Virus record (IMG/VR): IMGVR_UViG_3300010430_000003
Location: 146,327 to 210,326 of that record
Strand: one strand, 5' to 3'
DNA length: 64,000 nucleotides
In this document: positions 15,421 through 33,971 of the stretch, one piece after another
Position numbering within the stretch: position 1 is the first letter of the stretch
How the letters are laid out: every line of letters starts with the position of its first letter
Position numbers and translations under genes: made by a program
Notes under the pieces: generated by a model
Told to the model about the DNA's origin: nothing
The model's database searches: none
What the model saw: only the letters and a program-made list of their open reading frames with translations

Positions 15421-15433
15421 TGTTTGTCCTTTT

Positions 15434-17925: not shown

Positions 17926-18171
17926 TCAACATGTATTGCAACCCTTTTTCATAAAATCGAGAACTTCGATTAAATAGGTATCAAAATGATTAAAATATCT
18001 ATCTCTTACCAAGTCTAAAGTTATACAAGATTCATGATGGCTATAATTATCAAGAAAAACAGCGTATGGGAAAGAATAGTATGCATTCATATGAACGTTC
18101 CATGATTCGCGAAATAATCTACCCTTAGTTCCACCTAAAAATCTCTTGCAAATTAAAAAATTTATATTCAT
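17926..18171 (-). CDS. MNIN-family micro-ORF
   Basis: MNINFLICKRFL. Confidence 0.7.
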   Translation of the reverse strand: MNINFLICKRFLGGTKGRLFRESWNVHMNAYYSFPYAVFLDNYSHHESCITLDLVRDRYFNHFDTYLIEVLDFMKKGCNTC

Positions 18172-19000
18172 TTATAACCTTTAAACCATCTTTCAAACCA
18201 TGTTGGTTGACGATCATGCCAACGAACCTCTATTTTAGAGATCTCATTAGGTTCCCACAATGTTTTATATATTTCTTTATAAGTCAAATTAACAGAATCA
18301 ACTCTCCACACAGGAATCTTAAGATAAGCCCCAAGAATTTCAAACATCTCTTCTTTGGAAAAGATTAGAATAGATTTCTGTTTAACCAAATAATATTTCT
18401 GTGGCAACTGAGAAGTCGGTCTGGGATCAAGAAATTTGAGTTTCTCGTGAGGGCCAAACATTGTTTTAAAATCACTTGTGCTTAGATATTCTTTTTGTAA
18501 AGTAACCATCATTCACCGATATTCAGAATCATGCCAGAACAGTTCAATATATTCCTCGTATTTATCTTTGTGAAGATATTTGCGAAGATTGGCTTTTCCT
18601 TTAGCCCTATCCCTCTTCACCCTTCCCCGCTTGTAACATTTTATGGATTTGCGTGTATGAGGACTCACTAATCGCTGCCCCCACCACCTACAAAGAACAG
18701 TAAGAGTGATAAAATTCCAAACCACCAAGACAATTCAATATTAAAGAAAACGATTGGTTCTCCATATAACCACATAATCATCCATCCAATGGCAAATCCG
18801 ATGGCAAATCTAATGGCGTACATTACAGCGGCAAAAAGGAGAACCGTAAGAAAAGCACCAACCCCGAAAAGTACTGCAAGAACAGGTGTGAAGTAAGGCT
18901 TCAGAAAATCATAACTGCGTTGATACCAAGTTCTAATGTGGTGCATAATTGTTATTCCTTTGAAAGAAGAATATAAGGTTTTCATAGTAAGTATTTCCAC
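18168..19000 (-). CDS. three hypothetical ORFs (18168-18512, 18513-18728, 18668-19000 multi-TM)
   Basis: ORF track; the last is strongly hydrophobic. Confidence 0.5.
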
Positions 19001-19157
19001 TCGCCGTAAAGTTTTTAACTATTGTTTCATAATAAATTGCAGAGTTTCTAAACTTATCATTTGATACGAACATTTTATCTGCTGTCAGGCGATGCCAGTT
19101 GCAAATGTAAAGGACATAGGTTCGTGCTATGATGATATTAATATCGTTTGATTCCAT
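18933..19157 (-). CDS. MNIN-family micro-ORF
   Basis: MESNDINIIIARTYV. Confidence 0.7.
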   Translation of the reverse strand: MESNDINIIIARTYVLYICNWHRLTADKMFVSNDKFRNSAIYYETIVKNFTASGNTYYENLIFFFQRNNNYAPH

Positions 19158-19353
19158 TTAATTTAGCCAGCAGTGATTTGTTTTTATTTCTCAATAACAG
19201 TGAAATATTGTGCTTTATATATTGAGGATATCTTTGGAGTTTCTTCAAAGCGGGACATGTCTTTCTTGAAAAGCCATGGGAACCATTTTTGTAAATCTTA
19301 TGACAACCGCTATATAGAAAAATATGAGCAACAAAAATATTAATATTATTCAT
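19138..19353 (-). CDS. MNIN-family micro-ORF
   Basis: MNNINIFVAHIFL. Confidence 0.7.
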   Translation of the reverse strand: MNNINIFVAHIFLYSGCHKIYKNGSHGFSRKTCPALKKLQRYPQYIKHNISLLLRNKNKSLLAKLNGIKRY

Positions 19354-19598
19354 AATATAATCTAAAATCTAAACAATTTGTTGAAATCAATTCAATTTCA
19401 AATTTAGGAATATAAGAAATGAATTGTTCTTGTCGCAATTCAATTAATTCTTTTTCAACAATTGTTCGCAATTCATAAATACCTTTAGTATTTGCTTGAA
19501 GCGCAGTACCATTTTTCCTCTTAAAGAGGAGATATTTGTTTAAAATTTGAACGAGTTGTGCATAAAGCTGTTTATAAGTTAAGAATGGACTTTTCATC

Positions 19599-19811
19599 CT
19601 AAAAAGAACCCGAAAAATCAAATATATTTGAGACCCACTCTTTACTATAATATATCAGTTGTTGATTTTCAAACAGTTGTTGATTATAACTTCCATTTTT
19701 ATCAAGCCACCACACCACACAATTTCCCGCATTATCAACTTCTTTGACATACATACAAATATCACGGTATTCTCTAAGACATACTTTATCTTTTTTATGA
19801 AAAATAATCAC
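19599..19811 (-). CDS. small beta-barrel protein, possibly YodC/DUF2158-like
   Basis: FHKKDKVCL...MYVKEV...CVVWWLD pattern. Confidence 0.35.
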   Translation of the reverse strand: MIIFHKKDKVCLREYRDICMYVKEVDNAGNCVVWWLDKNGSYNQQLFENQQLIYYSKEWVSNIFDFSGSF

Positions 19812-20128
19812 TCTTCGTTCTTCTTTTCAAAATATTTACTTAAGTATTTTCTAATATTTGTAGCCCCAACAGGATTAGCAGAATGAACACACCAAGTCAA
19901 ATCAGTTATGTCCAACTTTTTATCCATATCCTGTTTTACAAGCCATTTAGCGCAATCATAACCAGTTTTAGAATAACGACCAGTACCACCCAAATCATGA
20001 TCAAAGGAAATTCCAAGAGGAACACCATGTTCAGTGATGTAATCACAAAATTCCTCATATGAACGCACTGTCACCCAGTGTTCATATGGAGATTCTCTAA
20101 TATCATCAAGAAATAAATGGTAAGACAT
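19808..20128 (-). CDS. cyclic-phosphate-processing receiver-like (cREC) domain protein
   Basis: LFLDDIRE, ISFDHDLG, TGYDCAKWL, VHSANPVG motifs. Confidence 0.8.
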   Translation of the reverse strand: MSYHLFLDDIRESPYEHWVTVRSYEEFCDYITEHGVPLGISFDHDLGGTGRYSKTGYDCAKWLVKQDMDKKLDITDLTWCVHSANPVGATNIRKYLSKYFEKKNEE

Positions 20129-20700
20129 TTAAACCAAACCTCTAAGTCTTGAATTATCTTGACCCATTTCATTAACCAGTGATTCAAGAAGAATAGACCA
20201 CTCTTTAAGATTAGATTTTGCAGGGAAACATGAGCGGAGAGCACCAACCCTCATAATTTGAGGGTGAATACTATTATTTAGCCTCTTAAGAAGGAAATCA
20301 ACTCTCTCCCACCTTTTGAGCCGACATTCAAAATGAAGAATTGTAAAAAGAGTTTCCATCCGCTTTTGAAGGTTGGGGTCCATTATTCCTCCAGCGCTTT
20401 AATTACTTCAGCTTCAAACTCTAGAGATAGGGAGTCCAGTTCTCCCTTGAATGAGTCTTGCTGTTTGAGGTTCTTATCAAGACGCTCCAAGAGTAATTTA
20501 ATGTTGAATTTAGGTTGTTTCTTTTCGAACACCCAAACAGTCACAGCACTTTTTGTACTCTGTCCAGAGGCATTCACATAAATTTCAGACTGGAACGAAT
20601 TTTTGAATTCACATCTCTTTGTGAGTTCGCTAGATGGTGGCTCAAATTGTTTTGTGGTGATTGTAAGGAAACGATCATTCTCTCTAACATAGATAGCCAA
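20129..20700 (-). CDS. two hypothetical ORFs (20129-20383, 20383-20700)
   Basis: ORF track, co-oriented. Confidence 0.55.
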
Positions 20701-21580: not shown

Positions 21581-21850
21581 ATGAAAATTACCAATAAGAG
21601 AATGATGGAAATTATCAAAGAAGAAACTGATCGATTTCTACGAGAAGTGGAACTTGGAGATTCAAACGAAACTCGACAAAAACTTGACTTGTTTGTTAAT
21701 TCTCTTGAAGAGCAAATTGAACTAATTGGTGATGCAATACTCATGGCAGCACAAGAAAACCCCGATGAATCAGAAAAACTAACAAGAATTATAACTGTTC
21801 ACAATGCTTATATTAAATCCCTTAAAGAGTTATCAACTATTTTAAGATGA
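21581..21850 (+). CDS. putative head-associated small protein
   Basis: MKITNKRMMEIIKEE N-terminus typical of large-phage virion proteins as I recall them. Confidence 0.55.
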   Translation: MKITNKRMMEIIKEETDRFLREVELGDSNETRQKLDLFVNSLEEQIELIGDAILMAAQENPDESEKLTRIITVHNAYIKSLKELSTILR

Positions 21851-23100
21851 AGTTATTTAAAATTAAAAATGAAACAAGTCTTGACACTTCTGACTTTGAA
21901 GAGTTGGCAAATGTCTTTATTCCATACCATCAACAAGAGTTGCAGTGGAGAAAACCTGTTAATATTAATCTGATTTCAGATGAGGAGAACAGTTCTAATC
22001 CTCTCGGTAAAACTGCTTATTATGATCCCAATGAACAACTAATTGTCTTATATCTTGATAATCGTCACGTAAAAGACATTCTTCGTTCGTTAAGCCATGA
22101 GCTTGTTCATCACTTTCAAAATGGCAAGGGGATGTTAACACCAATACAAGGTGAAGATCCTAAATACGCCCAGAATGATGATAACCTTCGTAAATGTGAA
22201 GAAGAAGCTTATTTGGTTGGAAACATGCTTTTCCGTGATTGGGAAGATGATTATAAAAATTCAGAAAAGTTAAATGAGGGATTTGATTCTCCACGAATTG
22301 ATGATTATCGATTTCTTATAACATGGAATCATCCAAACGGAGATGAACTCATTGTTGTTGATTATCCCTCACATGCAGAGATTCCAGATGAGAATAACTT
22401 TCGATCAGGTGCTAAAGTATATCTGCGAAAATGGCTCCGTCGATTTCCTCATCGGGGTTCTTTAACTTTCTGGGAACTTGACAAAAGTGTGGACGACATC
22501 ACTGATATTTATCAACCTGGTGATGTTATTCCTGCTGCCGCGATTGATTTTTCTGTCGCTGGTGATTATAAGGTCCGTGCGACACAGGATACCATTTCCC
22601 AAAAAGATATGTTTAAAATTGTACAAGAAAGTGTAATGTCCTTTAAGGAAATGATGCCCGATAAATTAGAAACTGAAATAATTGGAAGTATTAATCTAAA
22701 TAAAACAACAACAAACCGAAAATGGATCGGAACGGTTATATATGGCAAGAATGAAATTACTGTTTCGTATTTTTGGACAACTTTGGGAACTAAGTTCTTT
22801 GTTGTTTCGAATTCGTCCTTATATGGCCCAGAAGTAATTGATTCTACTTTTGAAAATAAAAAGCAAGCACGTTCTTTTGCTCTTTTGAATATGAAAGAAA
22901 CTTCATATGAAACAGACGTTTTTCAAATGAGAACATATAAAGATTACAACAAAGAAAAACGAGATGACAAAGGATATACTAAAAAGCTTAAAAGTTATCA
23001 ATATGAATCAATTTCTACTCGGAAAGAAGAGCATAGAATTAAATTGGAAGAAAGGCTGTATAAACGATTCAATATTCATCATAAAATTGGAGAAGAATAA
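21847..23100 (+). CDS. zincin-like metallopeptidase-domain virion protein
   Basis: SHELVHHFQ (HExxH) plus downstream EEEAY; domain ends near KLNE. Confidence 0.75.
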   Translation: MKLFKIKNETSLDTSDFEELANVFIPYHQQELQWRKPVNINLISDEENSSNPLGKTAYYDPNEQLIVLYLDNRHVKDILRSLSHELVHHFQNGKGMLTPIQGEDPKYAQNDDNLRKCEEEAYLVGNMLFRDWEDDYKNSEKLNEGFDSPRIDDYRFLITWNHPNGDELIVVDYPSHAEIPDENNFRSGAKVYLRKWLRRFPHRGSLTFWELDKSVDDITDIYQPGDVIPAAAIDFSVAGDYKVRATQDTISQKDMFKIVQESVMSFKEMMPDKLETEIIGSINLNKTTTNRKWIGTVIYGKNEITVSYFWTTLGTKFFVVSNSSLYGPEVIDSTFENKKQARSFALLNMKETSYETDVFQMRTYKDYNKEKRDDKGYTKKLKSYQYESISTRKEEHRIKLEERLYKRFNIHHKIGEE

Positions 23101-23286: not shown

Positions 23287-26200
23287 ATGGGTGGTCTCGC
23301 TGGTCGTATCAAATATCTTTATGAAGGTGATTTAACCTTCAAAGAACTTAAAACTATTCTTGAAAATATTTCATTAAGTCACCTTCCTCTTTATGAAAAA
23401 GTGGATGGATTTAATTGCTATTTTTCTTGCAGAAGAGGTATGCCTGTAATGGCTCGAAATCTGACCGAAGCACGGTCAGGTGGTTTATCCATCATTGAAC
23501 TATCAAATCGAGAATTTAAAGGTGGCAAGAAAGTAAAGAAGGTTTTTATTGAAGCCCTCAAAAATTTCTCCAAAGATTTCAGACTCTTAGATAAGAAAAT
23601 TTTTGAAAGCGATGGGAATCAAGTTTTTTATAATTTTGAAATCGTTGACAAAAATACGAATCGTTTGTTTGAATATGATAGTAACGGTCTTGTCTTGCAC
23701 AACTCTGGTCATTTCTGCATTGTTGAAAATAATAAACATTTTGTCAATGGCGATGGTTTTAGAACAGGAACTATCGGAACCAAATATATTAAGCATAATT
23801 TCAAAACCTCTCTTAGAGAAAATTCATATTTTGATGGAAGTTCATTCATACAAAGAATTGATGAAGTAATGCAATCAGTTGGATTGTCTGAACTCAATTC
23901 AATTTCAGAATTGAAAGAGCAAGAGAGACTCAAAAAGATTCTTAATGAGTTTTCTAATAATTTAATAAACTCTCTTAAAAGTAATTTTGTTGACAGTCAA
24001 GAAGAAAAAGTAACTCAATTCAAAGATCGAGTCAAAGAAGCTGTTGATTGTCTCCTTGAATATTCAGGTCCAAATCGAGCACAGGTCGTTGAAAAAACTA
24101 TTCATTATTTAAATCAATTCCCTGCCATTGACTCAATCAACTCATGCATTGAAGGGGTTGTTTTTGAACATAATGGCGAAATGTATAAAATGACTGGTTA
24201 TTATAGACCAATAAATCAACTTTATGGCTTTTATCAAAAGACGCTAAAGGAATTCGATTCAGGTCGAATGTATCCCATTGAGCCAAGCTCTTATAATGTT
24301 GACGGTGTTTTGACACATCCTCAAGAAAAAACCATTGCAATCTTTCCTGGAAGTTTTAAACCGCCTCATGCGGGACATTATCGAATCATTGAGGAATTGA
24401 AAAAACTCAAAACTCCTGATGGTTTTCATATTTGTAATAAGATAATCATTTTAATTTCTAATAAGGCTAGAATGGCTCAATCTGATTCGAAAACGACATA
24501 TGTCACCGCTGAGATTGCTAAGGAGCTTTGGGATCTCTATGTGTCAAATGAAGATGCTCAAACTCGAATTGAAGTCCGAGTTGCAGATCACGACACTCCA
24601 ATTAAGTGTGTTTATGATATCATGCTTAATGAAATGTCTCCCGGCGAAACTTTGATGTTGGTCAAATCAGATAAAGACGCAAATTCAGATCGATTTAATG
24701 CTTTTTCAGATTTCTCGGATGAATATGACCTCGGTGTTAAGGTTATTGCAAAAGAAATGAATATCTTCTCTGCGGGAATTTCAGCTTCAAATATGCGAAA
24801 CTGGATTGCTGATGGAGATGAGGATAGGTTCAAGGGCTTCCTCCCAGATCACTTATCGTCAGAAGACCGCGCTCGTGGTTGGGAAATTGTTACCGGCGAA
24901 CAAGACGTTTCGTTATCGGAAGACGACTCTTTTTTTTTAAGTGAAGGGTATGACGCTCTTCTTGAAGGAGAAGGTGATAAACGTCTAAAGAGTGCCCTCC
25001 GGAAGAACCCAGATTATAAAGAACAAATTGAAGCTCTTGCTGCAGCTGATCCTTCCGGCAAAGGAAGGAAGCTTTTGCCTTGGATGGTTCGTGAGCTTGT
25101 GAAGTTTGATGGCGGGCGAACAAATGATATTATTGCTGTGATATCATTGTTTTGGCAATATCGGCAACGCTTTAAAGCAGCTTCCTATTCAACCGATGTT
25201 TTTTCATATTCCTTTGAAGAAATGTTGACTCTCCTTAAGAAATTAAGACTCACTCCTCGTTTTGATAAAATTAAGTCTCCTCTTCGAACATCCAATTATC
25301 CCGGTTCTTCTGTTGTGTATGAGGAAGAAGACTTTGCTGTGATCCGACCATATACCTTTGAAGCTTCATGCTATTTTGGAGAAGAGGGAAATTGGTGCAT
25401 CTCCACTGATGAGGGTCATTGGAATGACTATGTCGGAAATGAATCTGTTCATTATATCTTAATTAATGATTCAATTAAATTTGAAGAAGATGCTGATTCA
25501 AAAATTGATTTTGTTGTAAGACATGGTACAGTCATGGAGCTGTGGGATAAAGAAAATACTTCTCTTGATGAAGATTATGTGGAAGAGCTTCTTGGAGAAG
25601 AACTCTATAACAAAATTGAACAAGCAATTTTAACAGATTATGAACGTGATCCTGATAATGAAGAAACAGGTAATCGCAAAGAGTGGATTGAACTTCAATC
25701 TGAAATCGAAGCTGATTGGGATGATCGAAAATATATCACATGTGAGATATATGAATATGATTCGAATCAATTCCAGCTTCAAGCTTGGATTAATATTGAC
25801 TTCGATGAAACGAATATAAAATTAAAACCGCAAGAACGCTCTTGGCAAGCGTCTCAAAAATTTTCTCATGCAATTGAAGCAATTATTGATTATACAATCG
25901 AAGATGTTGAAGTTGATGGGAATACAATTCGTGGTAGAATATACCTTGATGATGTATTTACCCCTGATGACGCACAATATAGTTGGGAGCAATTAACAGA
26001 AAAAGATGATTATCTTCAAGGTGATGATCCCGATGACAACATTCGAGCCGTTGTTTATTCACTGTGGGAATATGATTTAATTGAAGGTGAAACAGAAAGT
26101 AAAATAGAAATCATCAAAAAGATTGATGAGCATGAGTTCAGATATCTTTTCGCCGATTTTGATGAAGATGAAGGGTTATCGGTTCAATTTACTCTCCACG

Positions 26201-29118
26201 ATTTAATGCTTCCCATTTTTCCAGAACAATATGTTGTTTACGAAGATAAAGGGGTGGATTCAATGCGTCCAAATCTTAGTACACAAAGTTTTCAAAATAG
26301 AGCAATTCGAAGGCAAACTTTCGAAGGTGCAGACATTAAAATGCACACTCAAGATTTCTTTAAAAAGTTTGGAATTCCCACTTCTCTTGTAACAGCATCA
26401 GAACATGAAGTTATTCTTGGAGAAAAAGCTTATGGAATTGTTAATAAGAATTTAGAAATGGAAACGTTTGCTATTAGAGATAATTCTGGTGTTGAAAACT
26501 ATAGAGATGTCGATGAAAAAGTAAGTTCTGTTGTTAAACAGGCCGGGAAGGATCCTGATTTCTTAGATGGTGGAATAATTGTTGAATATTTCTCGAAGGA
26601 TGGGAAACTTGTAAATTCTGTTCATTGCTTGATTAAATTCTATCTTTGGATTGGAATAGCAGATCTTTTATATATTGATGATGATGACATGGCTGGCTTA
26701 TTGGAAAAGCTTATTGAATTAGATTCAAGCGGTAAAATTGAAGATTTCCGAAACCAAATTAAAGATCTCATGCTCGGTAAAAGAAAGTCAATTATGCAAA
26801 ACGATCTCGGAAAGATTAAAGATAATATAGGCAGGAAGTTTATCAATAAATATTATCTATCTAACTTTTCCGTAACAGAATCCTTTACTGATCAAATTCT
26901 CGAAAAATGTGGTCCTGATAAAACTGTGATTGTTTGGAATTCTCCTAGATCCCAAAACACAGATCGATATTTCCTTGAGGCAAAGCTTGAAGCTATGAAT
27001 AGGGGGATTGATACGTCTGGACTATATTACGCTCCAGTTAATGAACTGTTCATGACCGAACATGGATTGATAGAAGAAGAGATTAACGGTGGCTCTTCTG
27101 ATCAGTTTGCTGTTGTTCCAAAGATGAATACAAAGGCTCATTGGTATTTTAATAATTTAAAATCAGAAAATCAATTGGCTTCTCATTCATTGGGACAGTT
27201 TCATCTGTTAATGGAAAATCGGGTTGATTTCTTGCAAAAGACATATCGTGAGAAAATCTTCAATAAACTGATCAATAGTCTTTCAACACTCTATATGGCA
27301 GAAATAGACCACTTAAATTGGAAGTGGCTTGGACCTCACATTGTTGCCGCTTATAATAAGGTAATGGAAGACCCAGCCGTCGGGAAAGAATTCCTTTCAA
27401 GTATTGAAGAAGACGACATTGAAAGACTTAAAGACCAAGCATTTGAATTCTTTATTGAAACTGATCCTTCTAAAAAGAAAAAGTTTAGCCAATGGTTGAT
27501 CTTTAAGTTCATTAAAGATGACGAACGCATTGAAGATATCTGGAGTTCGGCGGGTGATCTTGAGCTTTTCGAACAGCTTGTTGAACGAAGAATTATTATA
27601 GGTGTTGATATCAACAAACTTTCATTAAAAGAACTTAAGGAAATTGTTGATGAACATGAAGGTCAGTTATCTGCTCGACAGAAGGCTGGTAAAGGAAATG
27701 AAAAAGAGCAAATCATCAAGAATGAAATGGACGTTCTCTTTCAAGAGGGTGAATATGTGATGGCTCTCCCAAAAACACAAAGAGCTTCATGTCTTCTTGG
27801 TACAGAAACACATTGGTGCACCGCTTCTCGTGGTGATCGCAACATGTTCGACATGTATTACGAAGACGGCCCGTTGATTGTGTTTATTACTCCTGCCGGA
27901 AAGTGGCAGCTTCACATTGAATCAAAACAATTTATGGATAAGAATGATTCTCCTATTGATTTATTACCTTGGATTGATTCCAATGAAATTTTCAAGGAAC
28001 CATTTTTGAAATTCTTGCTCGATAATGAATGGGATAAAAAGCTCGATCAAACCGATATATATAGCCAATATTTTTCAAATTCGGGAATGTTGAGAGATCT
28101 CTCCATTTTTATATTCCAAGAAACATTAACAGAAGAAAAAGCATTGGATATCATTGAGAAAGGCTCCCGACCAAAGAATGCTACTCACGTTGATTTTGGA
28201 ACCAAAAACTCATTTGGTGGGGAAATCAAGAATAAAATGTTATTCGATATCTTATGGAATTCAGAACATAAGAAGTGGTGGAAGCTTAAGAGACGTTGGG
28301 TTAGAAAACTTGTAGAAGCTTATGAAAATGGGGTCGTTCCCGTGGGTCAAATAAGAAAAGATATGGTGAATAACTTTATCAATCTAATGCCTCCCAACGA
28401 TTTCAAAGAAATCTTCATGCCAACTTTTATAAGTGAAAATTATCCAACATCCAGAGAGATGTTTTTGAAAACAATTGCTATTGATGCGCTCGGTTTGAAA
28501 ATTGGATTCAATACAGAGAAAGGAGCACAGAATTTTCTAACAATCCTCGAAAGAATAATTAAAAATGAGGGTGAGTCTAATCTTGCATGGAAATCATATC
28601 AAAATTCCATCGAACCAAAAGGTTGGGTGTTAGAGATGCTTAAAAGACCAAATCTTAAAGAATGGTATTCTCAAAAATTTGAAGAATTAGATTATGCTCA
28701 AAGAACCGCCGTAGCCTTCGATATGCTTAAAACAGGTAAGAAAAACAATGATCAAATGTCAGGCTCCTCAAATGTTGAATTCGTTGACGATAACTCCCCA
28801 ATTACCAAGTTCTTCATTCCAAGACTCAAAAAAGGAATTTCGGGATCAAAAAAATATAATGACTTCCCAAAATTGGGAGGTTATTTATCGCAATGGGAAG
28901 AGATTAACAAACTTGATCCAGAGATTACCGATATTTGGGTTGATACATTCTTAAATGCAGTGGAAAATGGAAAGGATAGTGATTCAAAAGAAAGGCAAAT
29001 GTCATGGATGTACGGTAACATTACTGATAAACATGGGAATCCTATTAGATATGGACCACCTCAATTCAAACAGTTGATTGAACCATTGAAAAAAGCACTT
29101 GGGCGAGATCATGATTGA
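23287..29118 (+). CDS. 1943-aa multidomain (polyvalent) protein: ligase-like nucleotidyltransferase + HxGH cytidylyltransferase-like + two copies of a DPS...ASC..G..WC module
   Basis: EKVDG, EGVV, YKMTG (ligase motifs I/IV/V); FPGSFKPPHAGH...ISASNMR; WC-module repeats near aa 590-750 and 1390-1560. Confidence 0.75.
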   Translation: MGGLAGRIKYLYEGDLTFKELKTILENISLSHLPLYEKVDGFNCYFSCRRGMPVMARNLTEARSGGLSIIELSNREFKGGKKVKKVFIEALKNFSKDFRLLDKKIFESDGNQVFYNFEIVDKNTNRLFEYDSNGLVLHNSGHFCIVENNKHFVNGDGFRTGTIGTKYIKHNFKTSLRENSYFDGSSFIQRIDEVMQSVGLSELNSISELKEQERLKKILNEFSNNLINSLKSNFVDSQEEKVTQFKDRVKEAVDCLLEYSGPNRAQVVEKTIHYLNQFPAIDSINSCIEGVVFEHNGEMYKMTGYYRPINQLYGFYQKTLKEFDSGRMYPIEPSSYNVDGVLTHPQEKTIAIFPGSFKPPHAGHYRIIEELKKLKTPDGFHICNKIIILISNKARMAQSDSKTTYVTAEIAKELWDLYVSNEDAQTRIEVRVADHDTPIKCVYDIMLNEMSPGETLMLVKSDKDANSDRFNAFSDFSDEYDLGVKVIAKEMNIFSAGISASNMRNWIADGDEDRFKGFLPDHLSSEDRARGWEIVTGEQDVSLSEDDSFFLSEGYDALLEGEGDKRLKSALRKNPDYKEQIEALAAADPSGKGRKLLPWMVRELVKFDGGRTNDIIAVISLFWQYRQRFKAASYSTDVFSYSFEEMLTLLKKLRLTPRFDKIKSPLRTSNYPGSSVVYEEEDFAVIRPYTFEASCYFGEEGNWCISTDEGHWNDYVGNESVHYILINDSIKFEEDADSKIDFVVRHGTVMELWDKENTSLDEDYVEELLGEELYNKIEQAILTDYERDPDNEETGNRKEWIELQSEIEADWDDRKYITCEIYEYDSNQFQLQAWINIDFDETNIKLKPQERSWQASQKFSHAIEAIIDYTIEDVEVDGNTIRGRIYLDDVFTPDDAQYSWEQLTEKDDYLQGDDPDDNIRAVVYSLWEYDLIEGETESKIEIIKKIDEHEFRYLFADFDEDEGLSVQFTLHDLMLPIFPEQYVVYEDKGVDSMRPNLSTQSFQNRAIRRQTFEGADIKMHTQDFFKKFGIPTSLVTASEHEVILGEKAYGIVNKNLEMETFAIRDNSGVENYRDVDEKVSSVVKQAGKDPDFLDGGIIVEYFSKDGKLVNSVHCLIKFYLWIGIADLLYIDDDDMAGLLEKLIELDSSGKIEDFRNQIKDLMLGKRKSIMQNDLGKIKDNIGRKFINKYYLSNFSVTESFTDQILEKCGPDKTVIVWNSPRSQNTDRYFLEAKLEAMNRGIDTSGLYYAPVNELFMTEHGLIEEEINGGSSDQFAVVPKMNTKAHWYFNNLKSENQLASHSLGQFHLLMENRVDFLQKTYREKIFNKLINSLSTLYMAEIDHLNWKWLGPHIVAAYNKVMEDPAVGKEFLSSIEEDDIERLKDQAFEFFIETDPSKKKKFSQWLIFKFIKDDERIEDIWSSAGDLELFEQLVERRIIIGVDINKLSLKELKEIVDEHEGQLSARQKAGKGNEKEQIIKNEMDVLFQEGEYVMALPKTQRASCLLGTETHWCTASRGDRNMFDMYYEDGPLIVFITPAGKWQLHIESKQFMDKNDSPIDLLPWIDSNEIFKEPFLKFLLDNEWDKKLDQTDIYSQYFSNSGMLRDLSIFIFQETLTEEKALDIIEKGSRPKNATHVDFGTKNSFGGEIKNKMLFDILWNSEHKKWWKLKRRWVRKLVEAYENGVVPVGQIRKDMVNNFINLMPPNDFKEIFMPTFISENYPTSREMFLKTIAIDALGLKIGFNTEKGAQNFLTILERIIKNEGESNLAWKSYQNSIEPKGWVLEMLKRPNLKEWYSQKFEELDYAQRTAVAFDMLKTGKKNNDQMSGSSNVEFVDDNSPITKFFIPRLKKGISGSKKYNDFPKLGGYLSQWEEINKLDPEITDIWVDTFLNAVENGKDSDSKERQMSWMYGNITDKHGNPIRYGPPQFKQLIEPLKKALGRDHD

Positions 29119-31576
29119 TTTAAAAGAAATAGAGCTAGCGCTCGAAAAGTATTATGATAAAGAAACAACTTTAGAGAACAATCTCTCTTCTTTTTATGAA
29201 AATTTGAGAGAAAATCCGAAGTTTTATTCTTATTCTGTCGCGAGAGAACAAAAAAGAGACCAATTATGCCCTGTGCGTGATCAAAATGACTGGCTTAGAG
29301 AGGAATTCACTCACAGTTCCCCCAATAGCTATTCAGAAGCCATAGAAACCACTGTAAGGTCATTAAAAGAGATTTTGGAGGCACTCTTCCTTGCCTCGCA
29401 AGAAGACTTTAGAGTGGATTCTGTTCGGTCTGACATAATGCGTAATCTTTCGATAATTTTAAAGACAGTTTTGCGGTCAGCGAAGCTCCAAAATACTGCA
29501 AATGACCCTGATATCGTAAATATTGCGAAAAAGCTGCTCAAAATGTCTGATGAACGTATCGGCACCCTTGAGTCTTATGAGCCAGAGATGCCAGAACTTT
29601 TTTATGACACCGCAAAACTCGTATATCAAACAATATATGTGTTAACTGCAGAGATAATCAATAACCCAACTGATTCTAATGTTTTTGATTCTCGAAACTT
29701 ATCAAAGATGCTTGATAAACTTGCAACGGCTGTTCGCCATGGATTTTATGAAGAGGCCTTCAGTGAATTCAGTGAAGGAAGGAATATTCTTAATCCCCAA
29801 CCAGAAATCTCTCCAACTTTGATTGACAAAGCAATTAAATACGAGAAAGACCGTTCGCGAACCACAGATATGGAAGGTCTTTATAATATTGTGCTTGCAA
29901 ACCTTGAAGAAGACCCCGATCATTATAATTTTCTTTTGAAGGGCAATCTTGATGAAATGTCTTCAATGGGAGGTGGTGCAGTTGCCGGCGCCATGGGTGT
30001 GGGTTTCGATCCCGATCCAAAAAAAAAGAAAAGATATGAAAAGTCTTTAATTGGTGAAAATAAAAAGAAGCTTGGGCAATTTTCTGATTGGTTGAAGACT
30101 CCTTTTTTTGGGGGCACTATTTTTTCTGATAATCTCCTTCGACGGCCCGAGGAGTGGGTTGCTGTTCATCCTGATGGGGATCATTTTGTTGATTATCAAG
30201 ATAACGAAGTTAAAATAACAGATGAAAAGTTAAGCATAGTTAGACCTTGGATGTTAGATCCTTCAAAATCCCGAGAAAATTGGGATCCTCATGGTGTTTG
30301 GTCAGAATGGCTATCTGATTATGAAATTATTTATAATGATAAAATTAATAAATTTGAGATTATTGAAAATCTTAAAAATATAAAAGCAAATATTGAAAAC
30401 TTAAGAGCAATTTTTTTCATTAATGAGGAAGACTACAATTTATATTCTAATATACTCAAACCGAATGAATCTCTTCCAAAAGAAGTTTGGGACTCATGTT
30501 TGATTGAACCATACGCTATGAATTATTCAGGTTATCTTGAACGAGATTTTATGCTTGATGGGATTGGGAAAGAAAGTAATGATATCTATTCTTCAAAAAA
30601 GTATTCGGTGGAGCCATGGGCAGAAAAGCATGGTTTGGGCTCTGTTGCTCAATCACATATGTTAACACAAGTTTATTGTAAAGGAGAAATGACAGACTTA
30701 AAAAGAGAGTTATGTAAAAAACTTATTAATTTAAAACAAACTCTAAATAAAAATTTATCAGAACAACAAGAACATGATTTGAAAATCTTTGAAGATTATG
30801 AAGACTATTTTCGAAATATCCATAAAGAGATTTCAGGAGAAGGAAAGGCTCCCGCAAAATTCTGGAAAGACCCGTTTTGGGTGGGGGCGGTGTTCAGCAA
30901 TTCAAATGGCGATGAATTTATGCTCGAACCAGAATTTGATTTCATCAACATAAATTATGACACCATTGAAGTGCCTGATGATGAGATTTTGGAAATCAAT
31001 CCATATCTTAACATCGATAATAAATATAGCGAAATTCGGTCAGATTATGAAATCACAATGGTCAACACTTTTGTTCACTATGGAGGTTCAGGATATTCCA
31101 TCTTTCATAATGGTCAGGAAAGATACTTAAAAAGCTGGCATGGGGCATATGAGTATTTCATGAATGACAACGAAGAATATCATCATGATACCCACCCAGC
31201 CAAAATGTATTATATGACCCCCTCTTTTGATTTGAGCGAGCTTCAAGATCATGAATGGTTCAATCATGGAAAGAGTGTTTGTTTGGTTGATTTTCATCAT
31301 GAAACTGAAATTTGGTTTTATTTAACAAAAGACAAGTTCATTGATTATCTAATAGATTATAATTCAACTAATAAAAGAATCTCTTATTATGTCCCGAATG
31401 GCACAATAGTAGGTGGGTTGAGAGTGAGATATGATAAATCAGGAATTCCTGATGGAATCTTCAAAGGAAACAAAAAACATAAAGTTCCATTAAATGTCTA
31501 TGTTGAAAAACATGGACCCGTTCCGCAATATAGTGATCTCAAACAAATCGTGAACAAATACTTTTATAGAAAGTAA
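29099..31576 (+). CDS. large putative head-packaged protein
   Basis: 825 aa; LDEMSSMGGGAVAG linker and LxE motifs between segments. Confidence 0.6.
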   Translation: MGEIMIDLKEIELALEKYYDKETTLENNLSSFYENLRENPKFYSYSVAREQKRDQLCPVRDQNDWLREEFTHSSPNSYSEAIETTVRSLKEILEALFLASQEDFRVDSVRSDIMRNLSIILKTVLRSAKLQNTANDPDIVNIAKKLLKMSDERIGTLESYEPEMPELFYDTAKLVYQTIYVLTAEIINNPTDSNVFDSRNLSKMLDKLATAVRHGFYEEAFSEFSEGRNILNPQPEISPTLIDKAIKYEKDRSRTTDMEGLYNIVLANLEEDPDHYNFLLKGNLDEMSSMGGGAVAGAMGVGFDPDPKKKKRYEKSLIGENKKKLGQFSDWLKTPFFGGTIFSDNLLRRPEEWVAVHPDGDHFVDYQDNEVKITDEKLSIVRPWMLDPSKSRENWDPHGVWSEWLSDYEIIYNDKINKFEIIENLKNIKANIENLRAIFFINEEDYNLYSNILKPNESLPKEVWDSCLIEPYAMNYSGYLERDFMLDGIGKESNDIYSSKKYSVEPWAEKHGLGSVAQSHMLTQVYCKGEMTDLKRELCKKLINLKQTLNKNLSEQQEHDLKIFEDYEDYFRNIHKEISGEGKAPAKFWKDPFWVGAVFSNSNGDEFMLEPEFDFININYDTIEVPDDEILEINPYLNIDNKYSEIRSDYEITMVNTFVHYGGSGYSIFHNGQERYLKSWHGAYEYFMNDNEEYHHDTHPAKMYYMTPSFDLSELQDHEWFNHGKSVCLVDFHHETEIWFYLTKDKFIDYLIDYNSTNKRISYYVPNGTIVGGLRVRYDKSGIPDGIFKGNKKHKVPLNVYVEKHGPVPQYSDLKQIVNKYFYRK

Positions 31577-31604: not shown

Positions 31605-32426
31605 ATGATCGATAGAGAAAAACTTTTAACAGAAATCAAATTCAGAAAATTCGTTCGAGATCTTCTTGAAGAAAAAGATAAGAAGGAATCTTTCAAAGAA
31701 AAAATGCAAGAAGAGGTGAGGTTTCGAAACTTTGTTCGGCAAGTTTTAACAAAAGAACGAGACACCCAAAAACTCACTGAAGCGAAGACCAAAATCATTC
31801 CTTATGATTCCACTGGCATTGCCATTCTTGCAGATGTGATCAAAAAAGTTATCCCAATTATTAAAGATGATTATTTCTCTCTGACCACAGATATCAAACA
31901 AAGAAAATCATTTCGTGCACACATTGTGAATGCTGTTCGAAATTCCCTCGCTCCAATTAGGAACATCCAAGGGTATCCAGTTGATAACAGTGGTGGAGAT
32001 GGACAATTGCTATCAGCACCAGATATGGTTTCTTCGCCGCATCATCATTATGCTCAATCCGGAAATGGTGCAAATGGACCACATGATACTGGATCAGTCA
32101 ATGAACAGACCGATCTTGAAGACGTTGATCAAGATGGAATCGCTGATAAGGATGATCGGTATATCGATACCGATGATAAGCCGGCAAAAAAAGTTAAATC
32201 CTCTGATGAGGAGGATACTTTCTCTCTTCCGGGTGAAGATGGAACAGGCAGAAACCTTGCCCTCTTAACTTATCGACGAATTGAAAAGGTTATTATTGAC
32301 GGATATCAAACTCTTGATCGCAGAGAAGATCAAGAGGATTTCTACGACTATATTGTGGCAAACTTAAAGATCTATTTTGATCGGTGGGAAGAGGAACTTC
32401 AAAAGGAATTATCAGAACGGTATTAA
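31605..32426 (+). CDS. putative virion protein with repeated LxE segments
   Basis: LLTEIKFRKFVR / MQEEVRFRNFVR internal repeat, LTEAK, VNEQ. Confidence 0.6.
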   Translation: MIDREKLLTEIKFRKFVRDLLEEKDKKESFKEKMQEEVRFRNFVRQVLTKERDTQKLTEAKTKIIPYDSTGIAILADVIKKVIPIIKDDYFSLTTDIKQRKSFRAHIVNAVRNSLAPIRNIQGYPVDNSGGDGQLLSAPDMVSSPHHHYAQSGNGANGPHDTGSVNEQTDLEDVDQDGIADKDDRYIDTDDKPAKKVKSSDEEDTFSLPGEDGTGRNLALLTYRRIEKVIIDGYQTLDRREDQEDFYDYIVANLKIYFDRWEEELQKELSERY

Positions 32427-32686
32427 GACAATTTTACTGATCTGTTAAATGTTCTCCGTAATCCAAATATTAGTTCGTAATGGGTATAGTTGGCGTGGAA
32501 AAAACTACATTTCCAACTATGAACCGATATGTTCGTCGACAGTTTATCTGATTTAGCATGTATCATTATACAATTACTAATCAATAAATTGATAAATTGA
32601 TTATCATTAGGATCAATTACATATCCTCTAATTTTGGTCTTCAAATGATAATGGTACATGGTATTTAACGAAGCATTGAATTCCAA
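32423..32686 (-). CDS. MNIN-family-like ORF with internal motif
   Basis: ...NQFINLLISNCIMI. Confidence 0.45.
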   Translation of the reverse strand: MEFNASLNTMYHYHLKTKIRGYVIDPNDNQFINLLISNCIMIHAKSDKLSTNISVHSWKCSFFHANYTHYELIFGLRRTFNRSVKLS

Positions 32687-32807
32687 AGCAGTTCAAATTC
32701 TTCAACAAGAAGATCAACAATTCGTGAAATTTCATCAGGAAGGGAAGCTCCCGGTGTGATTATCAAGTCTATATCATAGACTTCAAAAGTACGCTCATAT
32801 AAATCTT

Positions 32808-33038
32808 TCATCCCGCTCCTCTTTTAATTTCTCTTAAATCCAAAAGACACACCCACAAAAGAAAATTCTCTATACAATATTCTCCAAAAACAATCAATTC
32901 TTCATGTTCGTAAGATTCTATCACAGATTGTTTGGGGTCTATTTCCCATATTTTGGGGTTATTAATATCAACAGTGAAGTTTTGATTATATTGAAGAACA
33001 AAACTAGCCTTCACCATTTTATTAACAAATGAATTCAT
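32808..33038 (-). CDS. MNIN-family micro-ORF (KAxFVxQ subgroup)
   Basis: MNSFVNKMVKASFVLQY. Confidence 0.7.
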   Translation of the reverse strand: MNSFVNKMVKASFVLQYNQNFTVDINNPKIWEIDPKQSVIESYEHEELIVFGEYCIENFLLWVCLLDLREIKRGAG

Positions 33039-33247
33039 TTATGTTCATTGGAGAATGATAAGTAGTAGTAGTTTACATCTTCTATACATCCAGAAATAAC
33101 ATGTTTTGAATATTCAAGTATAGATGCCATACTTGAATATAGCGCTACGGAATAGTGCTTTCCTGGTATGGACGTCCATAAGAACCGACCATGTTGACGA
33201 ACAAAGCCAGCTTTAATCAGATTATTTATTGTTGAATGTGAATTCAT
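33035..33247 (-). CDS. MNIN-family micro-ORF (KAxFVxQ subgroup)
   Basis: MNSHSTINNLIKAGFVRQH; the A of ATG is the tRNA discriminator base. Confidence 0.7.
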   Translation of the reverse strand: MNSHSTINNLIKAGFVRQHGRFLWTSIPGKHYSVALYSSMASILEYSKHVISGCIEDVNYYYLSFSNEHK

Positions 33248-33330
33248 AGCGGGAGAGGGATTCGAACCCTCGAAGCCTTAACGGCAAAAGGTTATGAGCC
33301 TTTTCACTTTAACCACTTGTATATCCCGCA
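33247..33330 (-). tRNA. tRNA with CAT anticodon (Met or Ile2) and long variable arm
   Basis: Acceptor TGCGGGA/TCCCGCT (U1-U72 mismatch), D-loop AAGTGGTTAAA, AAAGG-CTCATAA-CCTTT, V-arm GCC-GTTAA-GGC, GAGGG-TTCGAAT-CCCTC; no encoded CCA. Confidence 0.85.
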
Positions 33331-33335
33331 GCAAA

Positions 33336-33685
33336 TTTATGATTAAATGCTCCGATTCTTCAACCACCACTTATGCCAATCTCCATCCTTGCGGGGAGGA
33401 GCAACCTTTAAGGTTGAGACAATCAGCTTAAGTCTTCTAACGGTACCTATCCCCAAGGTTCAGGCCGATCACTCGATCTGCACGCACCTCACTTAATCAT
33501 AAAAGCAAATCCTACCCCGAAGTCTCTCACCAATTAATAATCAACCGCACGAAAATTATTAATGACTTCGATCTCTCAACCTATGGAGTATCATAGGTCA
33601 CCAGCTTTGTATCATTCAAGAGCGAAAGGACAACGACATGAATGAATGAATTTTGTCTGATTGTTTGAACACCCGCAGCACAAGT
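33336..33685 (-). ncRNA. candidate ~350-nt structured non-coding RNA
   Basis: No ORF; 14-bp stem 33336-33349/33490-33503, nested stems CGAAGTC/GACTTCG and ATTAATAAT/ATTATTAAT, hairpins ACCTATG/CATAGGT, CAACCT/AGGTTG, and a GCAA tetraloop. Confidence 0.6.
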
Positions 33686-33692
33686 TATTAAC

Positions 33693-33720
33693 ATTATAGT
33701 ATATGTTGCAATTTTCTCAA
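33693..33720 (-). promoter_or_regulatory. sigma70-like promoter TTGAGA-N16-TATAAT for the ncRNA-tRNA transcript
   Basis: Read directly. Confidence 0.65.
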
Positions 33721-33727
33721 GAGAAAT

Positions 33728-33928
33728 TTATTCATCAATCCAACCTGCTTGTGAAGCACACCATGTCTTGACCATTTCTCTTTCTCGATAACCTAATCTA
33801 TCCCAAATAGCATCAAGTTCATCAAGCAACTTTTCTACTTTAGGACGATGCGTAGCTGATAGCGGTTTCTCTTTGCACAACTCTTGTGCCTGTAAGAAAC
33901 GCTCTTTGTAAATCTCAATTGTTTCCAT
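33728..33928 (-). CDS. hypothetical protein
   Basis: 66-aa ORF with GGAG RBS. Confidence 0.55.
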   Translation of the reverse strand: METIEIYKERFLQAQELCKEKPLSATHRPKVEKLLDELDAIWDRLGYREREMVKTWCASQAGWIDE

Positions 33929-33971
33929 GGATTCCCTCCGCTATGAAATCATATAAACTTTAGTCAGAAAA

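What the first reader, a model, noticed from the sequence alone, without database searches (positions are those of the whole stretch)
23287..29118. 1943-aa polyvalent protein joining ligase-like, HxGH-nucleotidyltransferase and duplicated WC modules
Seen: KxDG/EGxV/K motifs (about aa 37-300), an HAGH Rossmann nucleotidyltransferase (about aa 350-540), and two copies of a ~200-aa module (DPSGKGRKLLPW...RPYTFEASCYFGEEGNWCIS at about 25048-25450; DPSKKKKFSQW...LPKTQRASCLLGTETHWCTAS at about 27463-27900; possibly PcfJ-like). Established: phage polyvalent proteins carry many counter-defence enzymes delivered at infection; RNA ligases repair nuclease-cut tRNA and NMNAT-type enzymes help restore NAD+. 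Inference: this is an injected RNA-repair or NAD-related package; substrates are unknown.
Basis: partly seen in the sequence, partly recalled or inferred. Interest (0 to 1): 0.62.

Follow-up and report, generated by a model that had tools for sequence, protein, structure and literature searches.

The report
Jumbo-phage ligase–nucleotidyltransferase–PcfJ-like giant protein
A real 1943-residue protein of an uncultivated 210-kb phage joins an RNA-ligase-type enzyme domain, a second nucleotide-transferring enzyme domain and two copies of a very common but uncharacterised phage module; its parts are shuffled and fused in other large phages, but whether it is injected or what it acts on is still unproven.

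Summary

- **aa 1-335:** folds confidently (pLDDT 82.5). Its best structural matches are RNA ligases (T4 Rnl2, Trl1, Rnl5, REL1, Rnl1; Z 8.9-7.9). K38 (KxDG), E118, E289-G290 and K301 are invariant across 17 relatives.
- **aa 336-560:** an HxGH/ISxxxxR nucleotidyltransferase at superfamily level only. No NMNAT equivalog is reached.
- **The ligase-NTase pair:** these two domains recur together in 750-950-aa proteins of other large phages, and in swapped order in Microcystis phage Mel-JY01.
- **The two "WC" modules (aa 575-781 and 1379-1576):** they belong to a phage-specific family of at least 8,500 50%-identity clusters. The family has no Pfam model and no solved fold. It is remotely PcfJ-like, and one member is a mass-spectrometry-detected virion protein of phage PA5oct.
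- **The operon:** the gene sits in a conserved five-gene operon behind an HExxH (zincin-like) gene. Operon modules are fused differently in other phages.

"Polyvalent, injected" is only indirectly supported, because terminase and portal lie 120 kb away. An NAD+ role is unsupported. About 960 residues remain unassigned.

The parts
23287..29118 (+). Whole ORF, 1943 aa (P0001)
   Evidence: full-length relative P0002 (59% identity) and partial-architecture relatives P0003 and P0004
23287..24291 (+). aa 1-335: RNA-ligase-type covalent (lysine) nucleotidyltransferase domain, with a helical insert (about aa 185-275) between motifs IIIa and IV. Motif I EKVDGFN at 23395-23415, motif IV EGVVFE at 24151-24168, motif V YKMTG at 24184-24198.
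   Evidence: AF2 pLDDT 82.5. Foldseek: T4 Rnl2, prob 0.99-1.0. VIA Z 8.9-7.9 to Rnl2, Trl1-LIG, Rnl5, REL1 and Rnl1, against 6.5 or less for DNA ligases and capping enzymes. Invariant K38, D40, G41, N43, R57, N58, E289, G290, K301 in 17 sequences.
24292..24966 (+). aa 336-560: HxGH-class nucleotidyltransferase. PPHAGH at 24361-24378, ISASNMR at 24778-24798.
   Evidence: Pfam CTP_transf_like E 0.0019, below the gathering score. PHROG 395/3041 'cytidyltransferase'. Family profile against PDB: NaMNAT 1kam 6e-5, PPAT 3nd5 1e-4, NMNAT 1f9a 1.5e-4. TIGR00125 27.1 bits against a cut-off of 27.7. Invariant H361, H364, R504.
25009..25629 (+). aa 575-781: WC module copy 1, the diverged copy. It keeps the DPS...W, P-T, C, G and WC positions but lacks the Q-x-H positions.
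   Evidence: Family HMM i-E 3e-32; alignment A4
25630..27420 (+). aa 782-1378: unassigned. aa 782-1189 occurs only in P0001 and P0002. aa 1190-1375 is also conserved in P0003 and P0004.
   Evidence: No Pfam, PHROG, NCBIfam or PDB sequence match; conservation
27421..28014 (+). aa 1379-1576: WC module copy 2, the canonical copy (DPSKKK...W; LPKTQRASC...G...HWCTAS...Y...GP...QLH).
   Evidence: Family HMM i-E 7e-62. AF2 pLDDT 90.4. No PDB fold match. 8525 cluster representatives at E<=1e-3.
28015..29118 (+). aa 1577-1943: unassigned C-terminal region, shared with P0002 and P0003.
21847..23100 (+). Upstream operon gene, 417 aa. The N-terminal part is an HExxH (HELVH, aa 84-88, nt 22096-22110) zincin-like metallopeptidase module.
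   Evidence: Weak Peptidase_M91, M76, DUF6782 and DUF6647 hits in 5 of 5 homologues. 50% identical to aa 603-697 of Flavobacterium phage immuto gp088, which also carries the same HxGH NTase subfamily. Conserved position in L015, L016 and the P0002 contig.
29099..31576 (+). Downstream operon gene, 825 aa, of variable size in relatives (725-1470 aa). It carries the linear motif EMSSMGGGAVAG...SLI at about aa 285-330.
31605..32426 (+). Last operon gene, 273 aa. It is homologous to the C-terminal domain of the 912-920-aa ligase-NTase proteins, and to the gene directly after the ligase-NTase gene in L014.
   Evidence: blastp 35% identity, E 7.6e-41 to L013 aa 674-901; 36%, E 4e-53 to L014. Atlas structural neighbour of 995 aa carrying CTP_transf_like.
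21581..21850 (+). First operon gene, 89 aa, conserved in L015 and L016.

Best explanation
**Shown**
- The ORF encodes a modular giant protein of a ~210-kb phage with direct terminal repeats.
- Its invariant 'head' (aa 1-560) is a two-enzyme cassette. The first domain is an RNA-ligase-type lysine nucleotidyltransferase with nucleophile K38. The second is an HxGH/ISxxxxR nucleotidyltransferase.
- This cassette is conserved as a unit in many large phages and occurs in both domain orders.
- In this clade the cassette is fused to two diverged copies of a ~200-aa helical plus alpha/beta module. That module belongs to a huge phage-specific, remotely PcfJ-like family. The remaining ~960 residues have no assignment.
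- The gene is the centre of a conserved operon: 89 aa, an HExxH peptidase-like 417 aa, this protein, a variable 825 aa, and 273 aa. The operon's modules occur fused in other combinations elsewhere.

**Inferred mechanism**
- The cassette self-nucleotidylates K38 and joins or nucleotidylates broken RNA ends.
- The HxGH domain makes or recycles the nucleotide-containing substrate, or modifies the same end.
- The PcfJ-like modules act as docking modules. They would place the enzymes either in the virion for delivery or on a host target. In other proteins they are mostly fused to LRR, ankyrin, HEAT or WG repeats.
- The set therefore behaves like a 'split' polyvalent counter-defence package against RNA-cutting host defences.
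For: **Fold and catalytic motifs**
- Ligase-type fold and conserved motifs.
- NTase superfamily assignment and motifs.

**The cassette as a unit**
- It is found in 19 further protein clusters.
- It occurs in Mel-JY01 in swapped order: ligase HMM 3.9e-74 at aa 238-638, NTase at aa 25-181.

**The WC family**
- Its size and phage restriction.
- PcfJ link.
- Fusion partners are mostly repeats, plus one PolyA_pol/CCA-type enzyme and one GNAT.
- The PA5oct WC-module protein EST35_0205 is flagged ESI-MS/MS virion protein.

**Fusion and fission links**
- WC modules lie in a separate neighbouring gene in L013.
- p273 is fused to the ligase-NTase protein there.
- The p417 HExxH module is fused to the same NTase subfamily in phage immuto gp088.

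**Operon conservation:**
Against: - No activity, substrate or localisation has been measured.
- Motif V is K-x-T rather than the canonical K-x-K, and a ~90-aa helical insert interrupts the ligase domain.
- No end-healing module (kinase, phosphatase or 2H) was found in the protein or its neighbours.
- The genome has a separate distant RNA-ligase-like ORF at genome 32495-33583, so tRNA repair may already be covered.
- The gene lies 120 kb from terminase and portal, among methyltransferase, PhoH, nuclease and glycosyltransferase genes. Iyer et al. place phage polyvalent proteins near virion genes.
- The PcfJ link rests on weak statistics: hhalign probability 9.7%, and no HMMER match to pCF10 PcfJ.
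Confidence: 0.5

Rival explanations
1. This is an intracellular, not packaged, replication-cycle enzyme scaffold. The protein is made after infection and acts in the cytoplasm on phage or host RNA or nucleotides. The WC modules mediate assembly with the neighbouring operon proteins rather than virion incorporation.
For: - The gene sits among non-structural genes, 120 kb from terminase and portal.
- No MuF, portal-associated or other delivery domain was found.
- Operon partners are fused to the cassette in other phages, which suggests a complex.
Against: - A WC-module protein is in PA5oct particles.
- In Mel-JY01 the cassette gene lies between a 'structural protein' gene and terminase.
Confidence: 0.3
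2. This is an NAD+ restoration enzyme. The HxGH domain is an NMNAT that rebuilds NAD+ depleted by host defence, as in NARP2, and the ligase-like domain is accessory.
For: - The family profile's best PDB hits include NaMNAT and NMNAT.
- Phage immuto gp088, which has the same NTase subfamily, is annotated NMNAT/NadR by its depositors.
Against: - PPAT and FAD-synthase models score equally well. All equivalog models fall far below their cut-offs.
- No nicotinamide phosphoribosyltransferase partner was seen among the annotated neighbours.
- Obligate coupling to a ligase-type domain in both orders is not a feature of known NMNATs.
Confidence: 0.12
3. This is a virion structural or decoration protein whose enzyme-like domains are catalytically dead scaffolds.
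For: - Large size.
- Variable module content between relatives.
- WC copy 1 has lost several family-conserved positions.
Against: The catalytic residues of both enzyme domains are invariant in relatives only 27-33% identical overall: K38, D40, G41, E289, G290, K301, H361, H364 and R504.
Confidence: 0.06

Closest known systems
ATP-dependent RNA ligases (T4 Rnl2, T4 Rnl1, fungal Trl1 ligase domain, Naegleria Rnl5, trypanosome REL1)
   Same: The nucleotidyltransferase fold (Z 8.9-7.9, 177-212 residues aligned). Motif I KxDG lysine, motif III Glu, motif IV EGxV and a motif V lysine are all conserved.
   Different: - Only 9-15% identity, and no HMMER match to any solved ligase.
- Motif V is K-x-T.
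- A ~90-aa helical insert lies before motif IV.
- There is no recognisable Rnl C-terminal domain.
- It is always paired with an HxGH nucleotidyltransferase.
HxGH (HIGH-motif) nucleotidyltransferases: NMNAT/NadD, PPAT (CoaD), FAD synthase, glycerol-3-phosphate cytidylyltransferase (Pfam PF01467, TIGR00125)
   Same: The GxFxPxHxGH and ISxxxxR motifs, and the domain size.
   Different: It falls below every equivalog cut-off and marginally below the Pfam and TIGR00125 domain cut-offs. The acceptor substrate cannot be read from the sequence.
PcfJ-like domain (Pfam PF14284; pCF10 PcfJ, Herelleviridae 'PcfJ-like proteins')
   Same: - The core motif P-x9-G-x5-C, with [H/W]-C followed by Y...G...hydrophobic strand, aligns in hhalign.
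- Weak Pfam PcfJ hits lie inside the WC alpha/beta half.
- 29 of 30 named Atlas neighbours are PcfJ clusters.
- Both families are phage or plasmid borne and of unknown function.
   Different: - WC modules have an extra N-terminal helical half (DP[ST]...W), W instead of H before the Cys, and a Q-x-H strand.
- There is no HMMER-level match to pCF10 PcfJ.
- P0001 itself does not hit PF14284.
Polyvalent proteins of phages and conjugative elements (Iyer, Burroughs, Anand, de Souza, Aravind 2017, PMC5512222)
   Same: - A very large polypeptide combines disparate enzymatic domains.
- Module content varies between close relatives.
- An HExxH metallopeptidase-like module is linked by neighbourhood, and by fusion in phage immuto.
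   Different: - None of the described hub domains (MPTase, ArdC-N, MuF, ART, SNF2, DdrB-ParB) is in this polypeptide.
- RNA ligase, HxGH NTase and PcfJ are not in that paper's text.
- The gene is not near virion genes.
Pseudomonas phage PA5oct EST35_0205 (482 aa)
   Same: It carries one WC module (family HMM 3e-62; 30% identity to aa 1349-1558).
   Different: It has a single module with a different C-terminal part and no ligase or NTase domain. It is experimentally virion-associated, which is unknown for the window's protein.

Membership tests
Covalent nucleotidyltransferase superfamily, RNA-ligase branch | Nucleotidyltransferase (adenylyltransferase) domain fold | tested here: met
   AF2 pLDDT 82.5. 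Foldseek probability 0.99-1.0 to T4 Rnl2. VIA Z 8.9-7.9 to seven RNA ligases, ahead of DNA ligases and capping enzymes (Z 6.5 or less).
Covalent nucleotidyltransferase superfamily, RNA-ligase branch | Motif I KxDG with the nucleophilic lysine; motif III and IV acidic residues | tested here: met
   K38, D40, G41, N43, E118 (at least 90%), E289 and G290 are invariant in 17-18 sequences.
Covalent nucleotidyltransferase superfamily, RNA-ligase branch | Motif V with two lysines (K-x-K) | tested here: not met
   The family has Y-K-[FLM]-T-G. K301 is invariant, and T303 replaces the second lysine.
Covalent nucleotidyltransferase superfamily, RNA-ligase branch | Formation of an enzyme-AMP adduct and strand joining | not testable with these tools
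   This needs biochemistry.
HxGH nucleotidyltransferases (PF01467 / TIGR00125) | HxGH and ISxxxxR motifs in a Rossmann-like domain | tested here: met
   PPHAGH at aa 359-364 and ISASNMR at aa 498-504. H361, H364 and R504 are invariant.
HxGH nucleotidyltransferases (PF01467 / TIGR00125) | Curated model cut-off reached | tested here: inconclusive
   PF01467 scores 18.8 bits against 21, and TIGR00125 scores 27.1 against 27.7, for this protein. Relatives P0017, P0018, P0021 and P0023 carry precomputed PF01467. The family profile hits PDB NaMNAT, PPAT and NMNAT at 6e-5 to 1.5e-4.
NMNAT (NadD/NadR/NadM equivalogs) | Equivalog-level model match | tested here: not met
   Best scores are 13-22 bits against cut-offs of 112-341 bits. 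PPAT and FAD-synthase models score the same.
PcfJ-like (PF14284) | Match to the Pfam model | tested here: inconclusive
   - P0001 gives no hit at E<=1.
- 6 of 65 module sequences hit, best E 0.0011.
- 2 of 36 long relatives hit at E 3.5e-7.
- A local PcfJ-core HMM hits inside WC modules in 95 of 177 proteins, against about 10 expected by chance.
PcfJ-like (PF14284) | Profile-profile alignment of the conserved P...G....[H]C...Y...G core | tested here: inconclusive
   hhalign of A5 against A6 aligns 50 columns over exactly this core, with E 0.0033 but probability 9.7%. The single pCF10 PcfJ sequence gives nothing.
Polyvalent proteins sensu Iyer et al. 2017 | Two or more biochemically disparate domains in one polypeptide | tested here: met
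   A ligase-type NTase, an HxGH NTase and two PcfJ-like modules.
Polyvalent proteins sensu Iyer et al. 2017 | Linkage to the domain network through hub domains (MPTase, ArdC-N, MuF and others) | tested here: inconclusive
   No hub domain is in the polypeptide. An HExxH peptidase-like gene is adjacent, and that module is fused to the same NTase subfamily in phage immuto gp088.
Polyvalent proteins sensu Iyer et al. 2017 | Location near late or virion genes; delivery with the DNA | tested here: not met
   TerL and portal homologues lie at genome 49.5-53.2 kb and the gene at 169.6-175.4 kb. Its neighbours are non-structural. Delivery itself cannot be tested here.

The most novel reading that the evidence does not exclude
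The ligase-type domain and the HxGH domain, obligately paired in both orders across jumbo phages, form a previously undescribed two-step nucleotide-transfer machine. One example would be building a dinucleotide such as NAD+ or an NpnN and then attaching it covalently to an RNA end or a protein (cap-like marking or RNAylation), rather than simple tRNA repair. The PcfJ-like WC module would then be a general phage 'cargo adaptor' that loads very diverse payloads (enzymes and LRR, ankyrin or HEAT binders) into virions.
Probability: 0.15. Interest if true: 0.8.

Novelty: new variant of a known kind. Interest (0 to 1): 0.55.

Why it matters
- It defines an RNA-ligase-like plus HxGH nucleotidyltransferase cassette that public records name only "cytidylyltransferase-like", "NMNAT" or "hypothetical". 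The cassette is conserved across large phages of cyanobacteria, of unknown hosts, and in huge metagenomic phages.
- It also flags a phage-specific domain family of at least 8,500 50%-identity clusters with a confident predicted fold, no solved relative and one virion-proteome member. That makes the family a good target for structure and function work.
- The fusion and fission links (ligase-NTase with p273; NTase with the HExxH module; WC modules separate or fused) give concrete, testable partnerships.
- If the cassette repairs or marks RNA during infection, it would add a new counter-defence or RNA-modification route in jumbo phages.

Tried and rejected
- **Megablast of the gene against 50,697 phage records:** no match.
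- **tblastn of aa 1-560:** found only the NTase part in Lak phages.
- **Single-sequence and profile searches of the ligase domain against PDB sequences:** no ligase found. Only the fold search showed the relationship.
- **WC module against PDB:** sequence profile search, Foldseek and exhaustive VIA-align (best Z 5.3 on the helical half, 4.9 or less GNAT-like on the alpha/beta half) gave nothing convincing. A GNAT or hotdog assignment was rejected as a chance-level score.
- **hhalign and HMMER of the WC profile against the single pCF10 PcfJ sequence:** no match. The only apparent match, a short 'NWCTA' string at PcfJ aa 19-26 outside its C-terminal conserved core, was rejected as spurious.
- **Unassigned segments aa 800-1200, 1190-1380 and 1590-1943:** no Pfam, PHROG, NCBIfam or PDB-sequence match.
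- **Window ORF 14353-15498 (-):** tested as the counterpart of the RNA_ligase gene seen in L015. It is not one.
- **Sigma-70 promoter scan of the operon:** fewer sites than in shuffled sequence, so uninformative.
- **The genome search 'relatives':** not available for a virus record.
- **tblastn of p273 against phages:** no match.
Full report
**Setting.** The window is the last 64 kb (146327-210326) of a 210,326-bp IMG/VR virus record with direct terminal repeats. Its GC content is about 35%. Nothing in 50,697 GenBank phage records is close at the DNA level.

**Observation.** ORF 23287-29118 (+) is one open frame of 1943 aa.
- EKVDGFN at aa 37-43
- EGVVFE at aa 289-294
- YKMTG at aa 300-304
- PPHAGH at aa 359-364
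- ISASNMR at aa 498-504
- DPSGKG...NWCIS at nt 25048-25404
- DPSKKK...HWCTAS at nt 27463-27828

The two ~200-aa modules align at 23% identity with E 1e-7. Both hit a family HMM independently, at i-E 3e-32 and 7e-62, and no other ORF of the genome does.

**Ligase-like domain (aa 1-335).**
- Sequence searches of PDB find no ligase.
- A word search recovered 19 protein clusters of 684-947 aa that share the whole aa 1-560 region at 24-30% identity.
- In their alignment, K38, D40, G41, N43, R57, N58, E289, G290, V292, F293, Y300 and K301 are invariant. Y115, N116 and E118 are nearly so.
- An AlphaFold2 model built on this alignment has mean pLDDT 82.5.
- Foldseek ranks T4 Rnl2 first (probability 0.99-1.0). 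Rnl1, archaeal Rnl3, the Trl1 ligase domain and REL1 follow.
- The Foldseek-independent VIA-align search gives Z 8.9-8.4 for Rnl2, Candida and fungal Trl1, Naegleria Rnl5 and REL1, and 7.9 for Rnl1, with 177-212 residues aligned. DNA ligases and capping enzymes come only at Z 6.5-5.
- I therefore take the domain as a covalent lysine nucleotidyltransferase of the RNA-ligase branch. It has two peculiarities: motif V is K-x-T instead of K-x-K, and a helical insert (about aa 185-275) precedes motif IV.

**HxGH domain (aa 336-560).**
- Pfam CTP_transf_like is just under its threshold.
- PHROGs 395 and 3041 ('cytidyltransferase') match aa 346-550.
- A 17-sequence profile hits NaMNAT (6e-5), PPAT (1e-4) and archaeal NMNAT (1.5e-4) in PDB.
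- H361, H364 and R504 are invariant.
- NCBIfam places it only in the generic TIGR00125 domain. NMNAT, NaMNAT, PPAT and FAD-synthase equivalogs all score 13-22 bits against cut-offs above 100.
- The superfamily is established. NMNAT specificity is not.

**The two enzyme domains are a unit.**
- They co-occur in all relatives.
- In Microcystis phage Mel-JY01 the annotated 'cytidylyltransferase like protein' (639 aa) has them in the opposite order. The NTase is at aa 25-181 and the ligase-type domain at aa 238-638, with HMM E 3.9e-74.
- Fusion in both orders argues for functional coupling.

**WC modules.**
- A 6-sequence profile searched exhaustively against 1.84 billion cluster representatives finds 8,525 proteins at E<=1e-3 and 4,186 at E<=1e-10. 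Many of them carry 2-5 copies.
- There is no Pfam model. PHROGs 17056 and 28193 are 'unknown function'.
- Conserved positions, in the numbering of aa 1375-1600, are D19, P20, W29, D67, P121, T123, A126, C128, G131, T134, W136, C137, T138, Y150, G154, Q167 and H169. Copy 1 has lost the Q-x-H and some Thr positions.
- The AF2 model of copy 2 is confident, at pLDDT 90.4. It has a helical N-terminal half and an alpha/beta half.
- Neither Foldseek nor exhaustive VIA-align finds a convincing solved relative; the best Z is 5.3.
- In the ESM Atlas the nearest structures are phage-only clusters in which the module precedes WG, DUF4116 or LRR repeats.
- A Pfam census of 36 long relatives shows mainly repeat partners: LRR_5, LRV, LRR_8, WG_beta_rep, ankyrin and HEAT. 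It also shows one PolyA_pol/CCA-type enzyme and one GNAT.

**PcfJ link.**
- PcfJ is the Pfam family hit by the most module sequences, 6 of 65, with best E 0.0011.
- 29 of 30 named Atlas feature-neighbours are PcfJ clusters.
- Two of the 36 long relatives hit PcfJ at E 3.5e-7.
- I built a PcfJ-core alignment from pCF10 PcfJ and nine phage homologues. hhalign aligns it to the WC alpha/beta core with the same P-x9-G-x5-C spacing, at E 0.0033 but probability 9.7%.
- A local PcfJ-core HMM gives weak hits that fall inside WC modules in 95 of 177 proteins.
- HMMER of the WC profile against pCF10 PcfJ itself finds nothing.
- I regard remote homology as likely but unproven. PcfJ has no known function either; the literature searches returned nothing useful.

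**Virion evidence.**
- tblastn finds the module in Pseudomonas jumbo phage PA5oct and its relatives, in Salicola phage SCTP-2 (5 places) and in Caulobacter phage CcrBL9.
- The PA5oct gene EST35_0205 is annotated 'structural protein, ESI-MS/MS', and many of the annotated genes around it carry the same flag.
- The PA5oct paper reports 93 gene products linked to particles (PMC7318152).
- This is the only experimental hint of packaging, and it concerns a different protein.

**Operon and fusion network.**
- The order 89 aa, 417 aa, giant protein, variable large protein, ~279 aa is conserved in three related contigs. It is flanked by a methyltransferase on one side and by Trypsin_2 and PIN-PhoH genes on the other.
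- The giant protein ranges from 1341 to 2352 aa. P0003's gene call starts at M55, but the N-terminus with KxDG is in frame upstream.
- In the more distant 188.7-kb contig L013, two WC modules sit in a separate 1345-aa gene. It lies three short ORFs upstream of the p417-like gene, which in turn lies upstream of a 920-aa ligase-NTase protein. The C-terminus of that 920-aa protein is homologous to the window's 273-aa gene (E 7.6e-41).
- In L014 the p273 homologue directly follows the cassette gene.
- The 417-aa upstream gene has an HELVH motif. It gives weak but consistent zincin-peptidase hits in 5 of 5 homologues.
- Its module is 50% identical to aa 603-697 of Flavobacterium phage immuto gp088. 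That 907-aa protein also contains the same HxGH subfamily (HMM E 1.2e-26) but no ligase-type domain.
- The 825-aa gene shares a 60-aa segment with P0004. It also carries the short motif E-M-S-S-M-G-G-G-A-V-A-G...S-L-I. The same motif marks the border between the NTase and the C-terminal domain in the 750-950-aa family. I noted a proteolytic processing site as one possibility but did not test it.

**Against the 'injected polyvalent protein' reading.**
- Iyer et al. 2017 describe MPTase, ArdC-N, MuF and similar domains as hubs, and place phage polyvalent genes near virion genes. Their text does not mention PcfJ, cytidylyltransferase/NMNAT or RNA ligases as components.
- Here no hub domain is in the polypeptide.
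- Homologues of Mel-JY01 terminase and the adjacent gene lie at genome 49.5-53.2 kb, 120 kb away.
- The surrounding genes are metabolic or nucleic-acid enzymes: methyltransferase, PIN-PhoH, PD-(D/E)XK, glycosyltransferases, PurZ-like, aminotransferases and epimerases.
- A distant canonical RNA-ligase-like ORF exists elsewhere in the genome.

**Conclusion.**
- The domain anatomy is solid.
- The most likely function of the head cassette is nucleotidylation or joining of RNA ends, with a coupled second nucleotidyl transfer.
- The WC modules are best read as adaptor or docking modules of a vast phage family. Whether they dock to the virion or to host targets is open.
- I give about 0.5 to the RNA-end enzyme plus adaptor model as a whole. 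Within it, packaging is no better than about one in three. An NAD+-restoration role gets about 0.1.
- About 960 residues remain without any assignment.

Noticed in passing
window 44684-45772 (+): A 362-aa ORF matches PHROG 1211, '2-aminooxy adenylosuccinate synthetase' (PurZ-like), at E 2.9e-61. The phage may therefore replace adenine with 2-aminoadenine in its DNA.
   Followed up: no
window 38653-41180, 51851-54536, 57126-58235, 60669-61730 (+): Two GT4 glycosyltransferases, two aminotransferases and two nucleotide-sugar epimerases form a sugar-nucleotide gene cluster in the right arm of the genome.
   Followed up: no
window 29951-30088 (aa ~285-330 of the 825-aa gene): The short linear motif E-M-S-S-M-G-G-G-A-V-A-G, then a K-rich stretch, then S-L-I. 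The same motif (E[MVA]S[SA]M[AG]GGxVxG ... LIREE) sits at the NTase/C-terminal-domain border of 13 related proteins. It may be a processing or docking site.
   Followed up: partly
window 36939-37565 (+): A 208-aa ORF has a weak Pfam ATLF (anthrax lethal-factor-type metallopeptidase) hit, E 4e-5, below the gathering score. It would be a second zincin-like candidate near the operon.
   Followed up: no
L015 9812-10000: The database gene call for relative P0003 starts at Met55. The upstream 54 codons, which include the KxDG lysine, are in frame and intact, so the real protein is about 1341 aa.
   Followed up: yes
L017 7287-9206 (Microcystis phage Mel-JY01): The annotated 'cytidylyltransferase like protein' has the NTase first and the ligase-type domain second, the reverse of the window's order. 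It lies 2.6 kb upstream of the large terminase.
   Followed up: yes
L018 5195-7918 (Flavobacterium phage immuto gp088): This 907-aa 'NMNAT' contains three things: an N-terminal region with a GS...DxD pattern reminiscent of Pol-beta-type nucleotidyltransferases (by eye only), the same HxGH subfamily as the window's protein, and the p417-type HExxH module plus a second HEIEH motif.
   Followed up: partly
genome 32495-33583 (+), outside the window: An ORF distantly similar (21% identity, E 8e-12) to the Pfam RNA_ligase-bearing protein of contig L015. It is a possible separate RNA ligase.
   Followed up: no
L003 15874-17984 (plasmid pCF10): pCF10 PcfJ overlaps by 10 bp, on the same strand, a gene annotated 'Cas9 inhibitor AcrIIA9 family protein', which hints at an anti-defence neighbourhood.
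   Followed up: no
window 17926-20700 (-) and 32423-34259 (-): Runs of small minus-strand ORFs (60-114 aa) flank the plus-strand operon on both sides. Transcription diverges from the operon near 21.5 kb.
   Followed up: no
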